Part shown: positions 516-64,000 of the stretch, piece after piece
Layout of the letters: each line of letters begins with the position of its first letter
Numbering within the stretch: the first letter of the stretch is position 1
Assembly: GCA_965202585.1 (NCBI GenBank)
Contig: OZ241832.1
Coordinates: 36,394,001-36,458,000, forward strand
Length of the DNA: 64,000 nt
Origin: Thalia democratica
Taxonomy: Eukaryota
Direction of reading: 5' to 3'
Translations under genes and position numbers: made by a program
The notes under the pieces: generated by a model
What the model saw: the letters and a program-made list of their open reading frames with translations, nothing else
Database searches by the model: none
What the model was told of the DNA's origin: nothing

Positions 516-3500
516 CTGTCCGACTGAGAGTTGCTTCCGTCGTGTCGGTAGCTGATGATGTTGTTGTAGATGTCGCTCATGGTGAACGAAGTCACCGAAA
601 CCCCGTTCGATCTTTCAATCACCCCGTGACGTGGTTGGGACGTGATGAAAAAGTTCACTTCGTTTGACTGAAATACAAAGATTAATTTTAATTTGTGTTA
701 AAAACGAACAAAGTAAAGTTTTAATTCTAAGCATTGAAATTTGTGTGTTGAGTGATGAGTTAATAATTACGTTGGTGTCGGCGTCGACAGCTTTAAGTTG
801 GAATTCCGAGATGGTTTTCTTAACACCTTCCTGAACCCGTATTCCTGAGTTCTTGACAATCGGCAGGGAGTTGTCCACCGGAAGTATTGTGATGTAGAAC
901 GTTTGAGTAATCTGAAAAATATGCTGGTTTCTGTGACGTTTTTCGTTGCTAAAACATACTGCATGTACTTGTTCTAATAAGCTTAAAAGATGTTTAGTTA
1001 TTAATTTAGCTTGTTTCTTATTCTGTTATCTTATTTCTATTTATTAATTAATTTCTGTTATAAAATTATTTATCAAGGTTGTTCGCGGTAAAAACTTATT
1101 GCTTACAGAATTTGAGCCGTCAGAGACGTCAAAAACAATTTGATCTTCGGTTTGCGAAGTTTTGCTTGTGTGCTTGTACGAAATTTTCCCCAAACTCAAG
1201 TCTTTTTGGCTAAAGTTAGTAATTGAAGTGCCTACAAAAATACAAATTTAGTATTTAAAAACTTTAGAAATTATAAAATTGAATAAACGAAAACAAGTAC
1301 CTAAGTTATCAGCATTTTCCAGTCTACCAAGTTGGGGTGGTCTTATGACGTCATAGTATAATTTACCGGAATCGTCTGTTGCTAAAAGCTGATGGGTTGT
1401 AAGTACTGAGCTTTCTGCCTCATTAACGACCAGACCTTGAAAAATAGTTAAATTAGATATTTTATAACTTTAAAAAAATTTACACAAATATATTTGATGT
1501 TTTTTTACAAGAAACAACTTTTTTTATATTTTTCATTAAACGACATATCTTTATTAAAAAGTTTAAGTAGCTTTAAAATCCTTTAAACAGCTGAAACACA
1601 TCAAGTATTGAAATACTTTTGAATGAAGCTTCAGAGAATGTAATAAGTAATAATAATGAGTAATGTGTTGTATTAAGGTCAAGTACTTATCAAAGAAAGT
1701 CAAGTTGTATAAAATTAGAAAGCTTATAGAGTCAATCAGTTTGATGCTTTCCAGGTCCAAGGGTTTACAAACAACTCTTTTTATCCCACGCGTAACAGTA
1801 GGCGACTGTGTTTTGAAACTAACTAAATCTACTTTATTTGGGTTATTTCTTACGCACTTGATGAACTAACAAACTTATTTTAAAACGCAACTTTGCAAAG
1901 CTACATTGTTCTTTACACAAACTTAATGAAAAGTGCTAAACGGGTTTCGTGCAGACAGCATGAATAAAAGCCCACTTAGATTTTCTAATGTCAAGTAAGA
2001 GGGAATAATGTGTGCTTTCAGCATCCATACCATGCGATGATGAGAAAATTACCTGGTAAACACGCACCACAAATGAAAGAAATAAAACGAGTAATAAGAA
2101 AACTTTAGAAAGTAGGCTAAAAACAAAACCATTAGATATTACATAAGCGCCGTAATGTCCAGTTAATGCATAATTAAGTAATGATCGATTGTTTTGCGAA
2201 TGCAAAGCTTCCTCAAACCATTAGCTTTTTGAGCTATAAATTATTACATTTGCAGTCGTTTTCTCTTATTAAAATATTTTGTCGCTATTGTTATGTTAAT
2301 ATGACCTTTCAAACTCGTTGTTAAATTCTTTAAAGTTATTGAGACATTTAATACAAAAAAAAAAACCTAGAAATATTTTGGACAACTTCTGTACTTGTTT
2401 ACTAAAAAACCATAATAGTTTCTATTTATTGGTACTTTTAAACTAAAAGCGACGCTTTCACTTACCGACATTGGTGATGATTCTAGGTTTAGAAGCATCG
2501 ACTCTGACAGATATCTTAAAGCTTTGATCATATGGACCGTTTACTACGTCATAACCGAATGAAATTGATTTCTCTTCATTACTTGAATCATGCTTGTAAC
2601 TTAAGAAACCTGAAATAATGATTTAAAAGCATTAATAAATTTTCGGATAAAAATTCTTTACGACTTAATTCAACTGATTTTTTGCTATCAGGCAGATGTA
2701 TGTTTTTATACAAACCTCTGTCAATGTCCTGCTGGGTGAATGAATTGTACTGCAGCGCTTGCGACGTGACATTGACCGTTTCGTCACCGGCCTTGAGTTG
2801 AAGAACGCCGGATTCCGGGTCACGTGTCATTATGAACCTCGCTGCTTCTTTTTCCGTGTCGCTTGTTGCTTGCAGGTTCTTCGACGTGATGACAGTGGTT
2901 GAGCCTGCCAACAACAACGTCAGTTATTTCCCATTTTATGCTTGCGCGTAAGAAAACAAGCCTAACTAGTGTTTTTTTTTAGTTTGTAAATGTTAATCAA
3001 ACCTCTGATTATACTTAATGGTTGGTTCTTGATGATAGAATAGCTTACGTCGTAGTCGTAATCGTATTCGTCGTAGGTGTGATCGTTTACTTCTTCTACT
3101 ACGTCATCAAACACTGGACCAACCTTGATGTTTTATTTTTCATTTATAACTTAATGAAGTGAAATTGCTAAAAGCAGTTGGATTTTTTTTTAACTTACAT
3201 CAATTTCTACTTGCCCATTTGTTTTTGTGAAACCGTTATTAAGTGTGAAGCTTAGGACATCTCTCCTAATCCGGCGTGATTTTGATGATCCATGGTCTCC
3301 ACCACTTTCGTAAACTATTTTGCCGTCCAAAATATCCTTTTATAAAATTATTTATTATTCAAATAAACCTTTTTATCAAAAAAAAACTGTTATTAAACTG
3401 ATGTTAAATGTAAAATAAATAAGATTATACTTTGAATTAGCAAGTCAAAACGATGTAGACTTTGTAAAATAATAAAGCAAAAATTGCTCCATTGTTGTTT

Positions 3501-58532: not shown

Positions 58533-58739
58533 GATAGCTTAAATTTTCTATTTTGTATAAACAAAATTTCAATTAATATTTAAACCAAGTTTCGATCATT
58601 AAGTACTTAGTAAAGATATGTAAACACTTCTACTAACAATAAACAGAGAACTTTAAAAAAATTTGCAAACTGCAGCTTTTCTAAAAAAGTGTGTATCAAC
58701 AATATCGTATGCAAATAACTTTTATGAAAACAAAACAAA

Positions 58740-59372
58740 TTAGCTTTCCAGGTTGATGTTGTCGCCGAACTTGGCGTACAGCTGCGTCTTCAGCTCCTTC
58801 ATCTTCCCCTCCACCTCTCCCCGCTCCCCCTCCAGCTTCCTCCGCTTCCCCTCCAGCTCCTCCTTCAGCTGCGCCAGCAGGTCGTTCACCTCCTCCTGCG
58901 TGCCGTCCATGAACGTCTCGCCCATCTGGAACGGCACCTCCTCCTCCTCGTCGTCCAGCATCAGCAGGTCGTTCTCGGCGTCCTCCGCGTTCTCCATCTG
59001 GCGGTGAAAATTTTTAAATTACGATACAAATTAATTTGGTCGAAAAGTTCTACATTTAAAAAAAACGGCTTACTGCGTGCGTGCTGGCTTTTGAAAAATT
59101 TTTACTTACAGCCAGAAACTTGCAAGGTAGCTGTAACTGATCCGATTTTGTCTTGGTTACGTAAACAAGTAAAAGCTAAACAACTAAAACCGTTAAAAAG
59201 AACCAACTTGTTTGTTTAAAGCAAGCAGTTTAGACTTCAAATCTCCAAGTTCAATGTTGTATTGAGCAAACATGTTAATTTTTTTCTGGTCTTCGAATGT
59301 AACTTTCTGCTCCTCTTCTTTACCACTTGGATTCATTGACAATTTTTGAACTTTCTGTGTTGCCATGTCCAT
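58740..59372 (-). CDS. PFDN4: Prefoldin subunit 4, 2 exons, 140 aa
   Basis: Exon 1 59208-59372 (MDMATQKVQK...VTFEDQKKINMFAQYNIELGDLKSKLLALNKQ), 210-nt GT-AG intron, exon 2 58740-58997 (MENAEDAENDLLMLDDEEEEVPFQMGETF...LKTQLYAKFGDNINLES). VTFEDQxKINxFA and LYAKFGxNINLE are PFDN4 signatures. Confidence 0.93.
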
Positions 59373-59807
59373 AGTAATGTTTTATTTTCTATTAGGAATA
59401 TGTTGTATAAATCAAGCTTGAGAAAAAAACTTATAAATAAAACATTTAAGTAATTCAGTATGATTAATAAACTCTTTATTTAATTGCGAAACATTATTAT
59501 GATTTAGTTATGCTTAAAATAAATACATATTGAGCATAGTGTATAAGTACATAAAAACAATTTTACAGAAAAAAGTTTGTTTTTAAAAAGCTCATTAAAA
59601 AAAATCATGAAATCGTTCATGTATTTTGAGGCTGACTAAGTACATTTATTTCAATATTCTTAAATTCTTAAAATGATTTAAGTTAAAACATGTAGGAATG
59701 ATTTTTAAGTGTTTGTACTTTGCAGAAGATTTCTTAAACAGCAATCAGGATGTAAAATGAAAAATAAAAATCTTGTAATTTAGAACTTGTTTTACAGTTA
59801 TCAATGA

Positions 59808-62800
59808 TTAGTATGCTGGTATTTTCACCAAAAGGGACATCACTTCATTCCCTTTAGTGCACCTTCCGTCGGCAACATCACAAGTGTATCCGTTTGGACA
59901 ACAATGAATGTGATCATCACAGCAAACAGCATTTGGTTGAGGGCAGCAACCATATCTTCCATCAGCCATTTTACAACAAGTAGTACCAGTTGGACAGGAA
60001 GAGCCATCTCCGCAATCTACAGATTCTACATCGAAAGAAAGCTTTGGTTGGTTCATAGCTGGTTGTTTCACCAACAATGACATTACATCATTACCTTTAG
60101 TGCACCTTCCGTCAGCAACATCACAAGTGTATCCGTTTGGACAACAATGAATGTGATCATCACAGCATACAGCGTTTGGCTGAGGACAGCAACCATATCT
60201 TCCATCAGCCATTTTACAACAAGTAGTACCAGTTGGACAGGAAGAGCCATCTCCGCAATCTACAGATTCTACATCGAAAGAAAGCTTTGGTTGGTTCATA
60301 GCTGGTTGTTTCACCAACAATGACATTACATCATTACCTTTAGTGCACCTTCCGTCAGCTACATCACAAGTGTATCCGTTTGGACAACAATGAATGTGAT
60401 CATCACAGCAAACAGCGTTTGGTTGAGGACAGCAACCATATCTTCCATCAGCCATTTTACAACAAGTAGTACCAGTTGGACAGGATGAACCATCTCCGCA
60501 ATCTACAGATTCTACATCGAAATAAAGTTTTGGTTGGTTCATAGCTGGTTGTTTCACCAACAATGACATTACATCATTACCTTTAGTGCACCTTCCGTCA
60601 GCTACATCACAAGTGTATCCGTTTGGACAACAATGAATGTGATCATCACAGCACACAGCGTTTGGTTGAGGGCAGCAACCATATCTTCCATCAGCCATTT
60701 TACAACAAGTAGTACCAGTTGGACAGGATGAACCATCTCCGCAATCTACAGATTCTACATCGAAAGAAAGCTTTGGTTGGTTCATAGCTGGTTGTTTTAC
60801 CAACAATGACATTACATCTTCACCTTTAGTGCATCTTCCGTCGGCAACATCACAAGTGTATCCGTTTGGACAACAATGAATGTGATCATCACAGCAAACA
60901 GCATTTGGTTGAGGGCAGCAACCATATCTTCCATCAGCCATTTTACAACAAGTAGTACCAGTTGGACAGGAAGAGCCATCTCCGCAATCTACAGATTCTA
61001 CATCGAAAGAAAGCTTTGGTTGGTTCATAGCTGGTTGTTTCACCAACAATGACATTACATCATTACCTTTAGTGCACCTTCCGTCAGCTACATCACAAGT
61101 GTATCCGTTTGGACAACAATGAATGTGATCATCACAGCACACAGCGTTTGGTTGAGGGCAGCAACCATATCTTCCATCAGCCATTTTACAACAAGTAGTA
61201 CCAGTTGGACAGGAAGAGCCATCTCCGCAATCTACAGATTCTACATCGAAAGAAAGCTTTGGTTGGTTCATAGCTGGTTGTTTCACCAACAATGACATTA
61301 CATCATTACCTTTAGTGCACCTTCCGTCAGCTACATCACAAGTGTATCCGTTTGGACAACAATGAATGTGATCATCACAGCAAACAGCATTTGGCTGAGG
61401 ACAGCAACCATATCTTCCATCAGCCATTTTACAACAAGTAGTACCAGTTGGACAGGATGAACCATCTCCGCAATCTACAGATTCTACATCGAAAGAAAGC
61501 TTTGGTTGGTTCATAGCTGGTTGTTTTACCAACAATGACATTACATCTTCACCTTTAGTGCATCTTCCGTCGGCAACATCACAAGTGTATCCGTTTGGAC
61601 AACAATGAATGTGATCATCACAGCAAACAGCATTTGGTTGAGGGCAGCAACCATATCTTCCATCAGCCATTTTACAACAAGTAGTACCAGTTGGACAGGA
61701 AGAGCCATCTCCGCAATCTACAGATTCTACATCGAAAGAAAGCTTTGGTTGGTTCATAGCTGGTTGTTTCACCAACAATGACATTACATCATTACCTTTA
61801 GTGCACCTTCCGTCAGCTACATCACAAGTGTATCCGTTTGGACAACAATGAATGTGATCATCACAGCAAACAGCGTTTGGTTGAGGACAGCAACCATATC
61901 TTCCATCAGCCATTTTACAACAAGTAGTACCAGTTGGACAGGAAGAGCCATCTCCGCAATCTACAGATTCTACATCGAAAGAAAGCTTTGGTTGGTTCAT
62001 AGCTGGTTGTTTCACCAACAATGACATTACATCATTACCTTTAGTGCACCTTCCGTCAGCTACATCACAAGTGTATCCGTTTGGACAACAATGAATGTGA
62101 TCATCACAGCACACAGCGTTTGGTTGAGGGCAGCAACCATATCTTCCATCAGCCATTTTACAACAAGTAGTACCAGTTGGACAGGATGAGCCATCTCCGC
62201 AATCTACAGATTCTACATCGAAAGAAAGCTTTGGTTGGTTCATAGCTGGTTGTTTCACCAACAATGACATTACATCATTACCTTTAGTGCACCTTCCGTC
62301 AGCTACATCACAAGTGTATCCGTTTGGACAACAATGAATGTGATCATCACAGCAAACAGCGTTTGGCTGAGGACAGCAACCATATCTTCCATCAGCCATT
62401 TTACAACAAGTAGTACCAGTTGGACAGGAAGAACCATCTCCGCAATCTACAGATTCTGCTTCAAAATAAAGTTTTGGTTGGTTCATAGCTGGATGCTTTA
62501 CCAATAATGAAACAACATCACTTCCTTTTGTACAATGACCATTTGATACATCACAAGTGTAGCCATTTGGACAGCAGTGGACACCATCAGCACAACACAC
62601 AGCGTTTGCTTGTGGACAGCAACCATATCTTCCATCAGGCAGTTTACAGCAAGTTTCACCAAATGGACATGATGAACCATCTCCGCAAAAAACAGATTCA
62701 ACAGAAAGTTTTGGTTGATTCATAGCTGGATGCTTTGCCAATAATGAAACAACATCATTTCCTTTTGTACAATGACCATTTGATACATCACAAGTGTAAC

Positions 62801-63287
62801 CATTTGGACAGCAGTGGACACCATCAGCACAACACACAGCGTTTGCTTGAGGACAGCAACCATATCTCCCATCAGGCAGCTTACAGCAAGTTTCACCAAA
62901 TGGACATGATGAACCATCTCCGCAAAAAACAGATTCAACAGAAAGTTTTGGTTGGTTCATAGCTGGATGTTTTACAGACAAAGACACTGAACCTCCTTGC
63001 TTTGTGCACCTTCCATCAGCTACATCGCAAGTGTATCCGTTTGGACAACAATGAACGTGATCATCACAGCACACAGCGTTTGCTTGAGGACAGCAACCAA
63101 AAAGACCATTTGGAAGTTTGCAACAAGTTGAACCAGACGGGCAAGTAGAACCGTCTCCACACTGAACTGTGCTGTAAGCACTTGGCTTTTTCATTTGGAT
63201 AACTTCATTTGAGTTTGATGATTGAACATGAAACGAACAGACTGATGAGACCAAAATGACTAAAAGGCTGACTAAGATTAATCTCAT
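59808..63287 (-). CDS. GRN: Progranulin, single coding exon, 1159 aa, 14 complete granulin domains
   Basis: Signal peptide MRLILVSLLVILVSSVCS from ATG 63287 (the ORF-track start at 63359 lies upstream of an acceptor tttttcag at 63320-63321); 14 copies of the 12-Cys granulin motif C-x5-C-x5-CC-x8-CC-x6-CC-x5-CC-x5-C-x6-C; stop at 59808. Confidence 0.95.
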   Translation of the reverse strand: MRLILVSLLVILVSSVCSFHVQSSNSNEVIQMKKPSAYSTVQCGDGSTCPSGSTCCKLPNGLFGCCPQANAVCCDDHVHCCPNGYTCDVADGRCTKQGGSVSLSVKHPAMNQPKLSVESVFCGDGSSCPFGETCCKLPDGRYGCCPQANAVCCADGVHCCPNGYTCDVSNGHCTKGNDVVSLLAKHPAMNQPKLSVESVFCGDGSSCPFGETCCKLPDGRYGCCPQANAVCCADGVHCCPNGYTCDVSNGHCTKGSDVVSLLVKHPAMNQPKLYFEAESVDCGDGSSCPTGTTCCKMADGRYGCCPQPNAVCCDDHIHCCPNGYTCDVADGRCTKGNDVMSLLVKQPAMNQPKLSFDVESVDCGDGSSCPTGTTCCKMADGRYGCCPQPNAVCCDDHIHCCPNGYTCDVADGRCTKGNDVMSLLVKQPAMNQPKLSFDVESVDCGDGSSCPTGTTCCKMADGRYGCCPQPNAVCCDDHIHCCPNGYTCDVADGRCTKGNDVMSLLVKQPAMNQPKLSFDVESVDCGDGSSCPTGTTCCKMADGRYGCCPQPNAVCCDDHIHCCPNGYTCDVADGRCTKGEDVMSLLVKQPAMNQPKLSFDVESVDCGDGSSCPTGTTCCKMADGRYGCCPQPNAVCCDDHIHCCPNGYTCDVADGRCTKGNDVMSLLVKQPAMNQPKLSFDVESVDCGDGSSCPTGTTCCKMADGRYGCCPQPNAVCCDDHIHCCPNGYTCDVADGRCTKGNDVMSLLVKQPAMNQPKLSFDVESVDCGDGSSCPTGTTCCKMADGRYGCCPQPNAVCCDDHIHCCPNGYTCDVADGRCTKGEDVMSLLVKQPAMNQPKLSFDVESVDCGDGSSCPTGTTCCKMADGRYGCCPQPNAVCCDDHIHCCPNGYTCDVADGRCTKGNDVMSLLVKQPAMNQPKLYFDVESVDCGDGSSCPTGTTCCKMADGRYGCCPQPNAVCCDDHIHCCPNGYTCDVADGRCTKGNDVMSLLVKQPAMNQPKLSFDVESVDCGDGSSCPTGTTCCKMADGRYGCCPQPNAVCCDDHIHCCPNGYTCDVADGRCTKGNDVMSLLVKQPAMNQPKLSFDVESVDCGDGSSCPTGTTCCKMADGRYGCCPQPNAVCCDDHIHCCPNGYTCDVADGRCTKGNEVMSLLVKIPAY
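59820..63150. repeat. Coding tandem array, 243-bp period (237 bp for the first two units)
   Basis: 81-aa units (79 aa for units 1-2); units 4-14 differ almost only at synonymous sites. Confidence 0.95.
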
Positions 63288-63835
63288 GCCTATTTTTAGA
63301 AATTTTACACAAATTAAATCTGAAAAAGTAAGTAAAGCCTTAAAATAATTAACAAACAAAATCAGCTCAAGCTCTAAACAGTTAAATAAATATTATAAAT
63401 ATACTTAAAAGCTTTTCAATAACTAGGGATGCCACACTTTCAGTCAAAAAAAACTGTTCTGAATGACAAATAACTGTCCTTAGTAATCCTGAATTCTTTA
63501 AACCTTTTTAGAAAAATTTTAAATACTTTTTTATTAATTAAATAAACATTTTAAAATTTAAGTTTTTTTACAAAATGGTTATAAGTAAAGTATAGAAACT
63601 GGAACACCTAAATTTCATTCAAGATCTAGAAAAAAAACAGGACTGAAGTTTTCAGTTAAAAACTCTTTCAATTGTCCAGAGCTTTTTCTACAAAAACCAA
63701 ACTAGCCCAAGTCATCTTGAGTTTTTCAAAAATATTTAAAGTGTCTTGAGTATACTGAGTATCGAGAGCATGTTACGACCCTAGTTGACCTACTAAACTT
63801 ATCAAAACATTAACAAAACAAATAAGAAAAAATAC

Positions 63836-63917
63836 TACAGTGCTTATTCACTTATCCGGACACGTCGGGCAAGATTTTTATGTAAACATGTCCAGATAAC
63901 CTAAATTCCGGATAAGT
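63836..63917. mobile_element. Tc1/pogo-like MITE remnant
   Basis: tacagtgcttattcacttatccggac... with inverted tccggataagt at 63907-63917; TA|CAGT start typical of this superfamily. Confidence 0.4.
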
Positions 63918-64000
63918 AAAAAAATCAATCTTTTCATATAATAACATAACTGCTGCATATAATTCAATGCATGATACAAGTGTTATGGTAAAAACAATTA

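What the first reader, a model, noticed from the sequence alone, without database searches (positions are those of the whole stretch)
59808..63287. Intronless progranulin polyprotein with 14 granulins, 11 essentially identical
Vertebrate progranulin has 7.5 divergent granulins, each typically split across exons (established). Here, beside two intron-dense genes, a 3.48-kb single coding exon encodes three domain types: unit 1, units 2-3, and units 4-14 whose Cys-bounded cores are identical in amino acids. The conserved linker (TKGNDVMSLLVKQPAMNQPKLSFDVESVD) has no dibasic site, there is no paragranulin, and the C-terminus is KIPAY rather than the sortilin-binding QLL. Inference: intron loss or retroposition allowed unequal crossing-over, producing a polyubiquitin-like dose amplifier for one granulin peptide (growth, repair or defence role unknown).
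Basis: partly seen in the sequence, partly recalled or inferred. Interest (0 to 1): 0.7.

Follow-up and report, generated by a model that had tools for sequence, protein, structure and literature searches.

The report
Single-exon progranulin gene, 14 granulins
A marine planktonic tunicate has a real, expressed progranulin gene whose whole coding sequence is one exon with 14 granulin modules, 11 of them identical in protein, but this layout was already described for progranulins of other invertebrates, so it is an ordinary new member of a known family.

Summary
Window 59808-63287 (minus strand) is one open frame of 1159 codons: a signal peptide, then 14 Pfam Granulin modules. These are unit 1, units 2-3, and units 4-14 with identical Cys-bounded cores. 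RNA contigs from two plankton libraries lie colinear on both ends of the gene. Among the repeated cores all 9 variable sites are synonymous (dN 0, mean dS 0.15), so selection, not only youth, keeps the peptide identical.

Palfree et al. [quoted passage not shown] Their examples include Aplysia (13 modules, 11 identical) and single-large-exon arrays in sea urchin and amphioxus. I confirmed a 22-module single open frame in Lytechinus. The missing dibasic site, paragranulin and QLL tail are not distinctive. Intron loss is not needed for such amplification.

What is new is modest. The host is a tunicate (mitochondrial AGR = Gly), whereas Ciona's gene has 7 fully split modules. No split-exon paralogue exists in this genome. 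The genome also holds at least 25 single-granulin mini-genes and a prosaposin-like gene with many near-identical saposins.

The scan had not noted this on other DNA.

The parts
59808..63287 (-). Complete coding sequence of the progranulin gene: 1159 codons plus TAA, in one open frame
   Evidence: ORF list; first ATG and units; 14 Pfam Granulin stretches, E 8.5e-199
63234..63287 (-). Signal-peptide-like N-terminus, about 18 residues: Met-Arg, an 11-residue Leu/Ile/Val core, then SSVCS
   Evidence: Read from the translation. It is conserved, with one change, in the 83%-identical relative. No signal-peptide predictor was available.
63162..63233 (-). 24-residue spacer between the signal peptide and unit 1. 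It has no Cys, so there is no paragranulin half-module.
62925..63161 (-). Unit 1 (module type A, 79 codons)
   Evidence: Core dN 0.10-0.14 and dS 0.65-2.3 against the other types. Orthologous to unit r1 of the relative.
62445..62924 (-). Units 2-3 (module type B, 79 and 81 codons). Their cores are identical in protein and differ at 4 synonymous sites.
60015..62444 (-). Units 4-13: ten 243-nt copies of module type C. There are 9 distinct nucleotide versions. The cores are identical in protein. The linkers differ only by N>E (u7, u10) and S>Y (u11).
   Evidence: Core mean dN 0, dS 0.149.
59811..60014 (-). Unit 14: a terminal type-C module with the same core. Its tail is cut right after the conserved K-x-P-A motif and ends KIPAY.
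   Evidence: The same ending (KVPAY) is found in the relative.
63320..63331 (-). Acceptor-like site (pyrimidine run + CAG) 32 nt upstream of the ATG. It may be a 5'UTR intron or a spliced-leader acceptor; this is unproven.
   Evidence: Sequence; conserved in the relative; RNA depth stops between 63278 and 63305
59586..59807 (-). 3' untranslated region, with AATAAA at 59645-59650
   Evidence: Sequence; RNA contigs X5 59630-59861 and X7 59586-59892

Best explanation
This is the single long-form progranulin gene of a pelagic tunicate. It encodes a secreted or lysosome-bound precursor of 14 granulin modules: three older, divergent N-terminal modules and eleven C-terminal modules of one type.

Shown: the gene is real and its coding sequence is uninterrupted. 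It is transcribed. Each module has the 12-Cys granulin fold. The eleven repeated cores are kept identical in protein by purifying selection, while unequal crossing-over or gene conversion shuffles synonymous variants among units.

Inferred: as in mammals, the precursor is delivered to an acidic compartment and cut by lysosomal proteases. The cut would fall in the roughly 10-residue flexible part of each linker (around M-N-Q-P-K-L-S-F-D-V). Each translation would then yield about 11 copies of one granulin peptide of roughly 70 residues (core plus structured tail) and 3 variants. The single coding exon most likely arose by loss of the N/C-half introns that Ciona still has.
For: Identity and fold: Pfam finds 14 modules. 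PDB human granulins match at E 1e-17 with all Cys aligned. The AlphaFold model of u4-u5 has pLDDT 92.9, and its top four Foldseek hits are granulins.

Expression and colinearity: RNA contigs from two independent plankton libraries cover 62428-63278 and 59586-60123 without joints. The same library splices the neighbouring prefoldin intron. The upstream high-copy repeat has zero RNA depth.

Selection: all 9 variable core sites are synonymous, P about 2.5e-6 under neutrality. Mean core dN is 0 and dS 0.149. Against the relative, type C has dN 0.008-0.016 at dS 0.40-0.51.

Recombination: 12 of 78 site pairs are four-gamete incompatible, and u7 equals u10 at offset 729.

Linker anatomy: residues 53-70 are modelled confidently as strands, and only about 71-80 are low-confidence. 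The K-x-P-A motif is conserved across phyla.

Machinery: legumain, Vps10/sortilin-type and prosaposin-like genes are present in the genome. Human precedent for linker cleavage is in PMC8330050 and for trafficking in PMC8833632.

Only long-form gene: whole-genome searches with Pfam Granulin and with a Styela progranulin find no other array and no half-module exons.

Tunicate host: COX1 reads correctly only with AGR=Gly, TGA=Trp. Ciona Grn has 7 fully split modules.
Against: No peptide or protein data exist, so cleavage, its sites and the released product are inferred from mammals. The structured, strongly conserved linker segment could equally serve an uncleaved, multivalent protein. The copy number (14) rests on the assembly; I had no long reads. 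Contig word depth on repeat units is about 8-13 times the flank depth in run X1, which fits, but it is a rough figure and may come from the source sample. Whether the 5'UTR carries an intron is open. Intron loss versus ancient retroposition cannot be separated.
Confidence: 0.7

Rival explanations
1. The protein works mainly uncleaved, as a multivalent beads-on-a-string ligand or scaffold. The eleven identical modules would give avidity for one partner rather than a higher dose of a released peptide.
For: Most of the 'linker' is predicted to be folded, with pLDDT above 90 for residues 53-70. The linker is as conserved as the core: the K-[HQ]-P-A-M-N-Q-P-K-L stretch is invariant in all 13 linkers although core types differ at about 20% of residues. 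Intact mammalian progranulin is itself active (PMC4527844 introduction).
Against: A low-confidence segment of about 10 residues still separates modules. Every repeat has Asn residues there, and a legumain gene is present. In mammals the lysosomal granulins are the stable species (papers found).
Confidence: 0.22
2. The high copy number is an assembly expansion. The real gene has only a few units, like the 2-4 units seen in short-read contigs of a related species.
For: Contigs of the 83%-identical relative carry 4, 3 or 2 units. No long reads were available to me.
Against: Nine of the ten full repeats differ in nucleotide sequence, with a mosaic of synonymous variants, and the longest exact repeat is 467 nt. 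That is not what a spurious expansion looks like. Word depth of repeat-unit contigs is about 8-13 times the flank depth in X1. The varying 2-, 3- and 4-unit contigs of the relative show that short-read assemblies collapse this array, so they are lower bounds.
Confidence: 0.06
3. The gene is an old retrocopy of a lost intron-bearing parent, rather than the ancestral gene after stepwise intron loss.
For: All coding introns are absent at once. The gene is not linked to the tau/MAP gene (on C5, whereas Grn is on C8), although Palfree et al. report Grn-Mapt linkage in Ciona and vertebrates.
Against: There is no poly(A) remnant and no flanking direct repeat. The locus, including the neighbouring prefoldin gene, is shared with the 83%-identical relative. 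An acceptor-like site upstream of the ATG suggests ordinary splicing signals. Tunicate genomes are heavily rearranged, so lost synteny is weak evidence. All other granulin genes here are also single-exon.
Confidence: 0.2

Closest known systems
Aplysia californica progranulin (XP_005090713.1; Palfree, Bennett and Bateman 2015, PMC4527844)
   Same: Almost the same protein plan: 13 modules of which 11 are identical, divergent modules at the N-terminus, about 1160 residues. P0010 is 54% identical.
   Different: The Aplysia repeats are encoded by many split N, C and CN exons. Here the coding sequence is one exon.
Sea urchin and amphioxus progranulins (S. purpuratus, B. floridae in PMC4527844; Lytechinus pictus P0006/L021)
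   Same: Long runs of near-identical modules inside a single large exon. The Lytechinus open frame L021:3612-8744 holds 22 full modules. An environmental eukaryote, P0001, has 22 modules in one ORF.
   Different: Those genes still have other exons at their ends (the Lytechinus gene spans 14.4 kb). They have more modules and belong to other phyla.
Ciona intestinalis Grn (Palfree Table 2)
   Same: It is the closest relative whose exon structure is published: a tunicate long-form progranulin with a signal peptide and no paragranulin.
   Different: Ciona has 7 modules, each split into an N and a C exon. The window gene has 14 modules, none split, and 11 of them identical.
Human progranulin (GRN)
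   Same: The same 12-Cys module (E 1e-17 to granulins A, C and F). It shares the tandem modules joined by linkers of about 26 residues carrying K-x-P-A, and the secretory signal.
   Different: Human GRN has 7.5 divergent modules, split exons, a paragranulin and a C-terminal sortilin-binding tail. None of these mammalian extras is present here.
Polyubiquitin and multi-copy peptide precursors (by analogy only)
   Same: Head-to-tail identical protein units that differ only at synonymous sites, which is the mark of concerted evolution under strong purifying selection.
   Different: They are unrelated in fold. Ubiquitin units abut without linkers and are released by dedicated enzymes. Release is unproven here.

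Membership tests
Granulin module (Pfam PF00396) | 12-Cys motif C-C-CC-CC-CC-CC-C-C that scores above the curated cut-off | tested here: met
   14 stretches, 644 bits against a cut-off of 20.9. The regex for the full motif finds 14 modules.
Granulin module (Pfam PF00396) | Stacked beta-hairpin fold like the solved granulins | tested here: met
   Sequence match to 2jyt, 2jye, 2jyv and 6cku. AlphaFold pLDDT is 92.9 with short paired strands. The top four Foldseek PDB hits are granulins, although E is only about 0.01 against flexible NMR models.
Progranulin (long-form Grn) | Secretory signal followed by tandem granulin modules and nothing else | tested here: met
   The signal peptide was judged by eye only.
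Progranulin (long-form Grn) | Inter-module linkers of about 20-30 residues with the conserved K-x-P-A element | tested here: met
   The window linkers are 27-29 residues long with K-[QH]-P-A. The consensus of 60 homologue segments shows K-x-P-A. The motif is present in 42% of 1201 distinct linkers, whose median length is 26.
Progranulin (long-form Grn) | Modules split into N-half and C-half exons (typical but not universal) | tested here: not met
   The open frame is uninterrupted. This is not disqualifying: sea urchin, amphioxus, C. elegans and choanoflagellate genes have unsplit modules.
Progranulin (long-form Grn) | Proteolytic release of granulin peptides | not testable with these tools
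   Inferred from mammals only.
Mammalian-type progranulin | Paragranulin half-module and a C-terminal sortilin-binding tail | tested here: not met
   There is no half-module, and the protein ends KIPAY. Invertebrate C-termini vary widely. Trafficking through prosaposin or other routes exists in mammals.
Processed retrogene | Poly(A) remnant, target-site duplication, and an intron-bearing parent elsewhere | tested here: not met
   No A-tract follows the 3'UTR. The flanks share no 12-mer. No other long-form gene exists. The locus is shared with the relative.

The most novel reading that the evidence does not exclude
In this pelagic tunicate lineage the granulin-saposin peptide system may have been amplified as a whole and is kept so by selection. 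One granulin type was expanded to 11 copies inside a progranulin that lost all its coding introns; a sister species' contigs show as few as two type-C units. In addition there are at least 25 tandem single-granulin mini-genes with almost no database relatives, and a prosaposin-like gene with more than 20 saposins, about 12 of them near-identical. This could reflect a lineage-specific demand, such as very fast growth and budding, or defence in a filter feeder.
Probability: 0.2. Interest if true: 0.5.

Novelty: new member of a known kind. Interest (0 to 1): 0.28.

Why it matters
It adds a clean, fully resolved example from a pelagic tunicate to the known pattern of near-identical tandem granulin modules. 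The repeated cores have dN = 0 at dS = 0.15 within the array, and dN/dS is about 0.02 against a sister species. These numbers show that the identity of the repeated module is selected and is not just recent. It also documents complete loss of the module-splitting introns within tunicates, relative to Ciona. It does not open a new question about progranulin biology. Its practical value is for annotation and as a natural 'one-peptide' progranulin in which processing and the function of a single granulin type could be studied.

Tried and rejected
1. Contig 'joints' 59589>63513 and 59674>63511, which would delete the whole gene. Rejected as noise: the shorter side is only 20-23 letters, several joints converge on 63511-63513 (the edge of a high-copy repeat), and there is no sequence similarity or duplication at the ends.

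2. Retrogene hallmarks: none found.

3. Synteny with the tau/MAP gene as a test of the ancestral locus. The MAP-repeat gene is on another chromosome, which is inconclusive in a rearranged tunicate genome.

4. Gene structure of Styela clava progranulin. Two isoforms were not on record, so I relied on Palfree's Ciona table.

5. Copy number in the related species. Contigs give 4, 3 and 2 units, which shows short-read collapse, so no conclusion can be drawn.

6. Literature on salp or ascidian progranulin. There is nothing specific, only a ligand-receptor mention in a Styela endostyle atlas.

7. A search for an intron-bearing paralogue with Pfam Granulin and a Styela protein over the whole genome: none found. 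Isolated half-module exons would score low, and only the best candidates are scored.

8. Several window ORFs tested for neighbouring genes gave no Pfam hit, apart from one cadherin-like exon.
Full report
OBSERVATION. The window has no N. The ORF listing finds one long ORF at 59808-63359 on the minus strand. Its first ATG, at 63287, starts a typical secretory leader: Met-Arg, an 11-residue Leu/Ile/Val core, then SSVCS. That gives a 1159-codon coding sequence ending in TAA at 59808-59810. Pfam finds 14 Granulin stretches (E 8.5e-199). Tandem Repeats Finder finds a 243-nt period, 13.6 copies, 94% matches and no indels.

Cutting at the first Cys of each module gives unit 1 (62925-63161), units 2 and 3 (62445-62924), ten 243-nt units (60015-62444) and a shortened unit 14 (59811-60014). 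The 52-residue Cys-bounded cores of units 4-14 are identical in protein, units 2 and 3 share a second core, and unit 1 is a third type. There is no half-module, no N-glycosylation sequon and no dibasic pair in any linker, and the protein ends KIPAY.

IS IT A REAL, EXPRESSED GENE? Sixteen public runs were listed for the stretch and 14 of them hold part of it; six of those 14 are on record as RNA, from marine plankton. I laid four runs on 58600-64000.
- RNA contigs of a metatranscriptome (X5) and an oligo-dT library (X7) lie colinear on 62428-63278, which covers units 3, 2 and 1 and the leader. They also lie on 59586-60123, which covers units 13-14 and about 220 nt of 3'UTR, past an AATAAA at 59645-59650.
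- Two internal controls show this is RNA rather than contaminating DNA. The same X7 library joins 59208 to 58997, splicing the intron of the downstream prefoldin gene. The high-copy repeat at 63487-64000 (DNA word depth 7,000-100,000) has zero depth in both RNA runs.
- RNA stops between 63278 and 63305. A pyrimidine run plus CAG ending at 63320, 32 nt before the ATG, is conserved in a related species. 'Intronless' is therefore shown only for the coding sequence; a 5'UTR intron or a spliced-leader acceptor remains possible.

IS THE ARRAY AN ARTEFACT? Nine of the ten full repeats differ at the nucleotide level, and the longest exact repeat is 467 nt. The variants form a mosaic, with 12 of 78 site pairs failing the four-gamete test. 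Contig word depth over repeat units in run X1 is about 8-13 times that of the flanks. That figure is rough and possibly comes from the source sample. I had no long reads, so the exact number 14 rests on the assembly.

SELECTION. Among units 4-13 there are 14 variable sites. All 9 in the core are synonymous, with P about 2.5e-6 given a 24% synonymous fraction. Mean pairwise core dN is 0 and dS 0.149. The three module types are old: dS is 0.65-2.3 and dN 0.10-0.14.

A relative known from marine metagenome contigs (L026, L027, L063) is 83% identical in DNA and colinear from 63832 to 58476, including the prefoldin gene. It has the same gene as one open frame with the same order of types and a KVPAY end. 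Against it the amplified type C has dN 0.008-0.016 at dS 0.40-0.51. That makes it the most constrained of the three types; type A has dN 0.034 at dS 0.60, and type B has dN 0.05 at dS 0.25. Contigs of that relative carry 4, 3 or 2 units. This shows that short-read assemblies collapse the array, so its copy number is unknown.

WHAT ORGANISM? The mitochondrial COX1 on contig C1833 gives the universal motifs only if AGA/AGG are read as Gly, TGA as Trp and ATA as Met. There are 32 AGR codons at positions that read as Gly under that code, including the canonical COX1 motifs. That is the ascidian (tunicate) mitochondrial code. Together with the plankton RNA this supports a pelagic tunicate. The genome is 802 Mb, and the window lies on a 67-Mb chromosome-scale contig.

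HOW IT LIKELY WORKS. Each unit matches human granulins A, C and F at E 1e-15 to 1e-17 with all Cys aligned. An AlphaFold model of units 4-5, built on 60 homologous two-module segments, has mean pLDDT 92.9, and its best PDB matches are granulins.

The model adds one point. The first 18 or so residues after the last Cys, including the K-Q-P-A element, are modelled with pLDDT above 90 as further short strands. Only about ten residues (roughly N-Q-P-K-L-S-F-D-V-E) are low-confidence. The real flexible linker is thus short. The K-x-P-A element is conserved across phyla and occurs in 42% of 1201 distinct linkers.

In mammals progranulin reaches lysosomes through sortilin, prosaposin or other routes (PMC8833632). 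It is then cut in the linkers by cathepsins and by asparagine endopeptidase after Asn (PMC8330050). This genome encodes legumain, Vps10-type and prosaposin-like proteins, and each linker has Asn in the flexible part.

I therefore infer, but cannot show, cleavage into about 11 identical peptides plus 3 variants. The rival, an uncleaved multivalent protein, is kept at about 0.2 because the linker is unusually conserved and largely structured.

COMPARISON WITH WHAT IS KNOWN. [quoted passage not shown] They report the following.
- Aplysia has 13 modules, of which 11 are identical.
- Similar runs occur in Nematostella, oyster, sea urchin, amphioxus, Xenopus and zebrafish GrnA.
- The runs sit either in a single large exon (sea urchin, amphioxus) or in split exons (Aplysia, oyster, zebrafish).
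- Divergent modules sit near the N-terminus and repeats near the C-terminus.

My own survey agrees. Of 722 hits, the 120 listed have 9-24 modules and identical-core sets of up to 16. The Lytechinus gene has 22 full modules in one open frame, and an environmental eukaryote has 22 in one ORF. Half of all homologue linkers lack a dibasic pair, and C-termini are not conserved.

WHAT IS SPECIFIC HERE. Ciona, the tunicate examined by Palfree, has 7 modules that are each split into N and C exons. The window gene has none split, so the coding introns were lost within tunicates. Whole-genome searches with Pfam Granulin and with a Styela progranulin find no second long-form gene and no half-module exons.

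I see no retrogene hallmarks, and the locus is shared with the relative. The tau/MAP gene is on another chromosome, which is weak evidence either way.

Intron loss is not a precondition for amplification. In this same genome a prosaposin-like gene with split saposin exons carries about 12 near-identical modules.

VERDICT. The gene is a new member of a known kind, of modest interest. The scan's index shows only this same stretch under 'granulin', so it was not found before on other DNA.

Noticed in passing
Own genome: C10:9.259-9.458 Mb, C10:27.588-27.610 Mb, C10:32.243-32.273 Mb, C8:35.397-35.408 Mb, contigs C1114, C1162, C1545 (loci L017-L020, L028-L058): At least 25 intact and about 4 broken copies of a single-exon 74-codon mini-gene sit in tandem clusters. 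Each encodes a 21-residue signal peptide plus exactly one 12-Cys granulin. The mature part has pN 0.009 and pS 0.064. Only 3 database relatives exist, all metagenomic (best 73% identity). One cluster lies about 1 Mb from the window's array.
   Followed up: partly
Own genome C2:64,784,600-64,818,700, minus strand (L059-L062): A prosaposin-like gene holds 24 Pfam SapB_2 matches in 34 kb. Each saposin is split into two exons. About 12 C-half exons are identical or differ at 1-3 residues, with a period of about 1.3 kb. Progranulin's known lysosomal partner is therefore also amplified as near-identical modules in this genome.
   Followed up: partly
Own genome C1:73.57-73.65 Mb and C5:26.69-26.74 Mb (L013-L016): Six single-exon genes of about 225 residues: signal peptide, one granulin, a spacer of about 110 residues without Cys, then a divergent second 12-Cys module.
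   Followed up: partly
window 58740-59372 (minus): A prefoldin subunit gene (Pfam Prefoldin_2, E 1.3e-11) starts 435 nt downstream of the progranulin stop on the same strand. It has two coding exons (59372-59208 and 58997-58743), and RNA shows the intron spliced. The short same-strand spacing in a tunicate raises the possibility of co-transcription.
   Followed up: partly
window 63487-64000: A very high-copy repeat lies just upstream of the gene. DNA contig word depth is 7,000 to over 100,000, against about 50-100 for the flanks. Its edges are near 63511 and 63836, and it has no RNA depth. It is absent from the related species' contig beyond the position matching 63832.
   Followed up: no
Own genome contig C1833 (L023:1501-2817) and C4:56.84-56.94 Mb, C757: Mitochondrial COX1 uses the ascidian code (AGR=Gly, TGA=Trp, ATA=Met). 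Several decayed nuclear copies of COX1, with many stops, lie on C4 and C757.
   Followed up: partly
window 2588-2917 (minus): An exon-sized open frame has a Cadherin_3 (cadherin-like) Pfam match, E 1.7e-7. It belongs to the multi-exon gene filling the GC-richer first 35 kb of the window.
   Followed up: no
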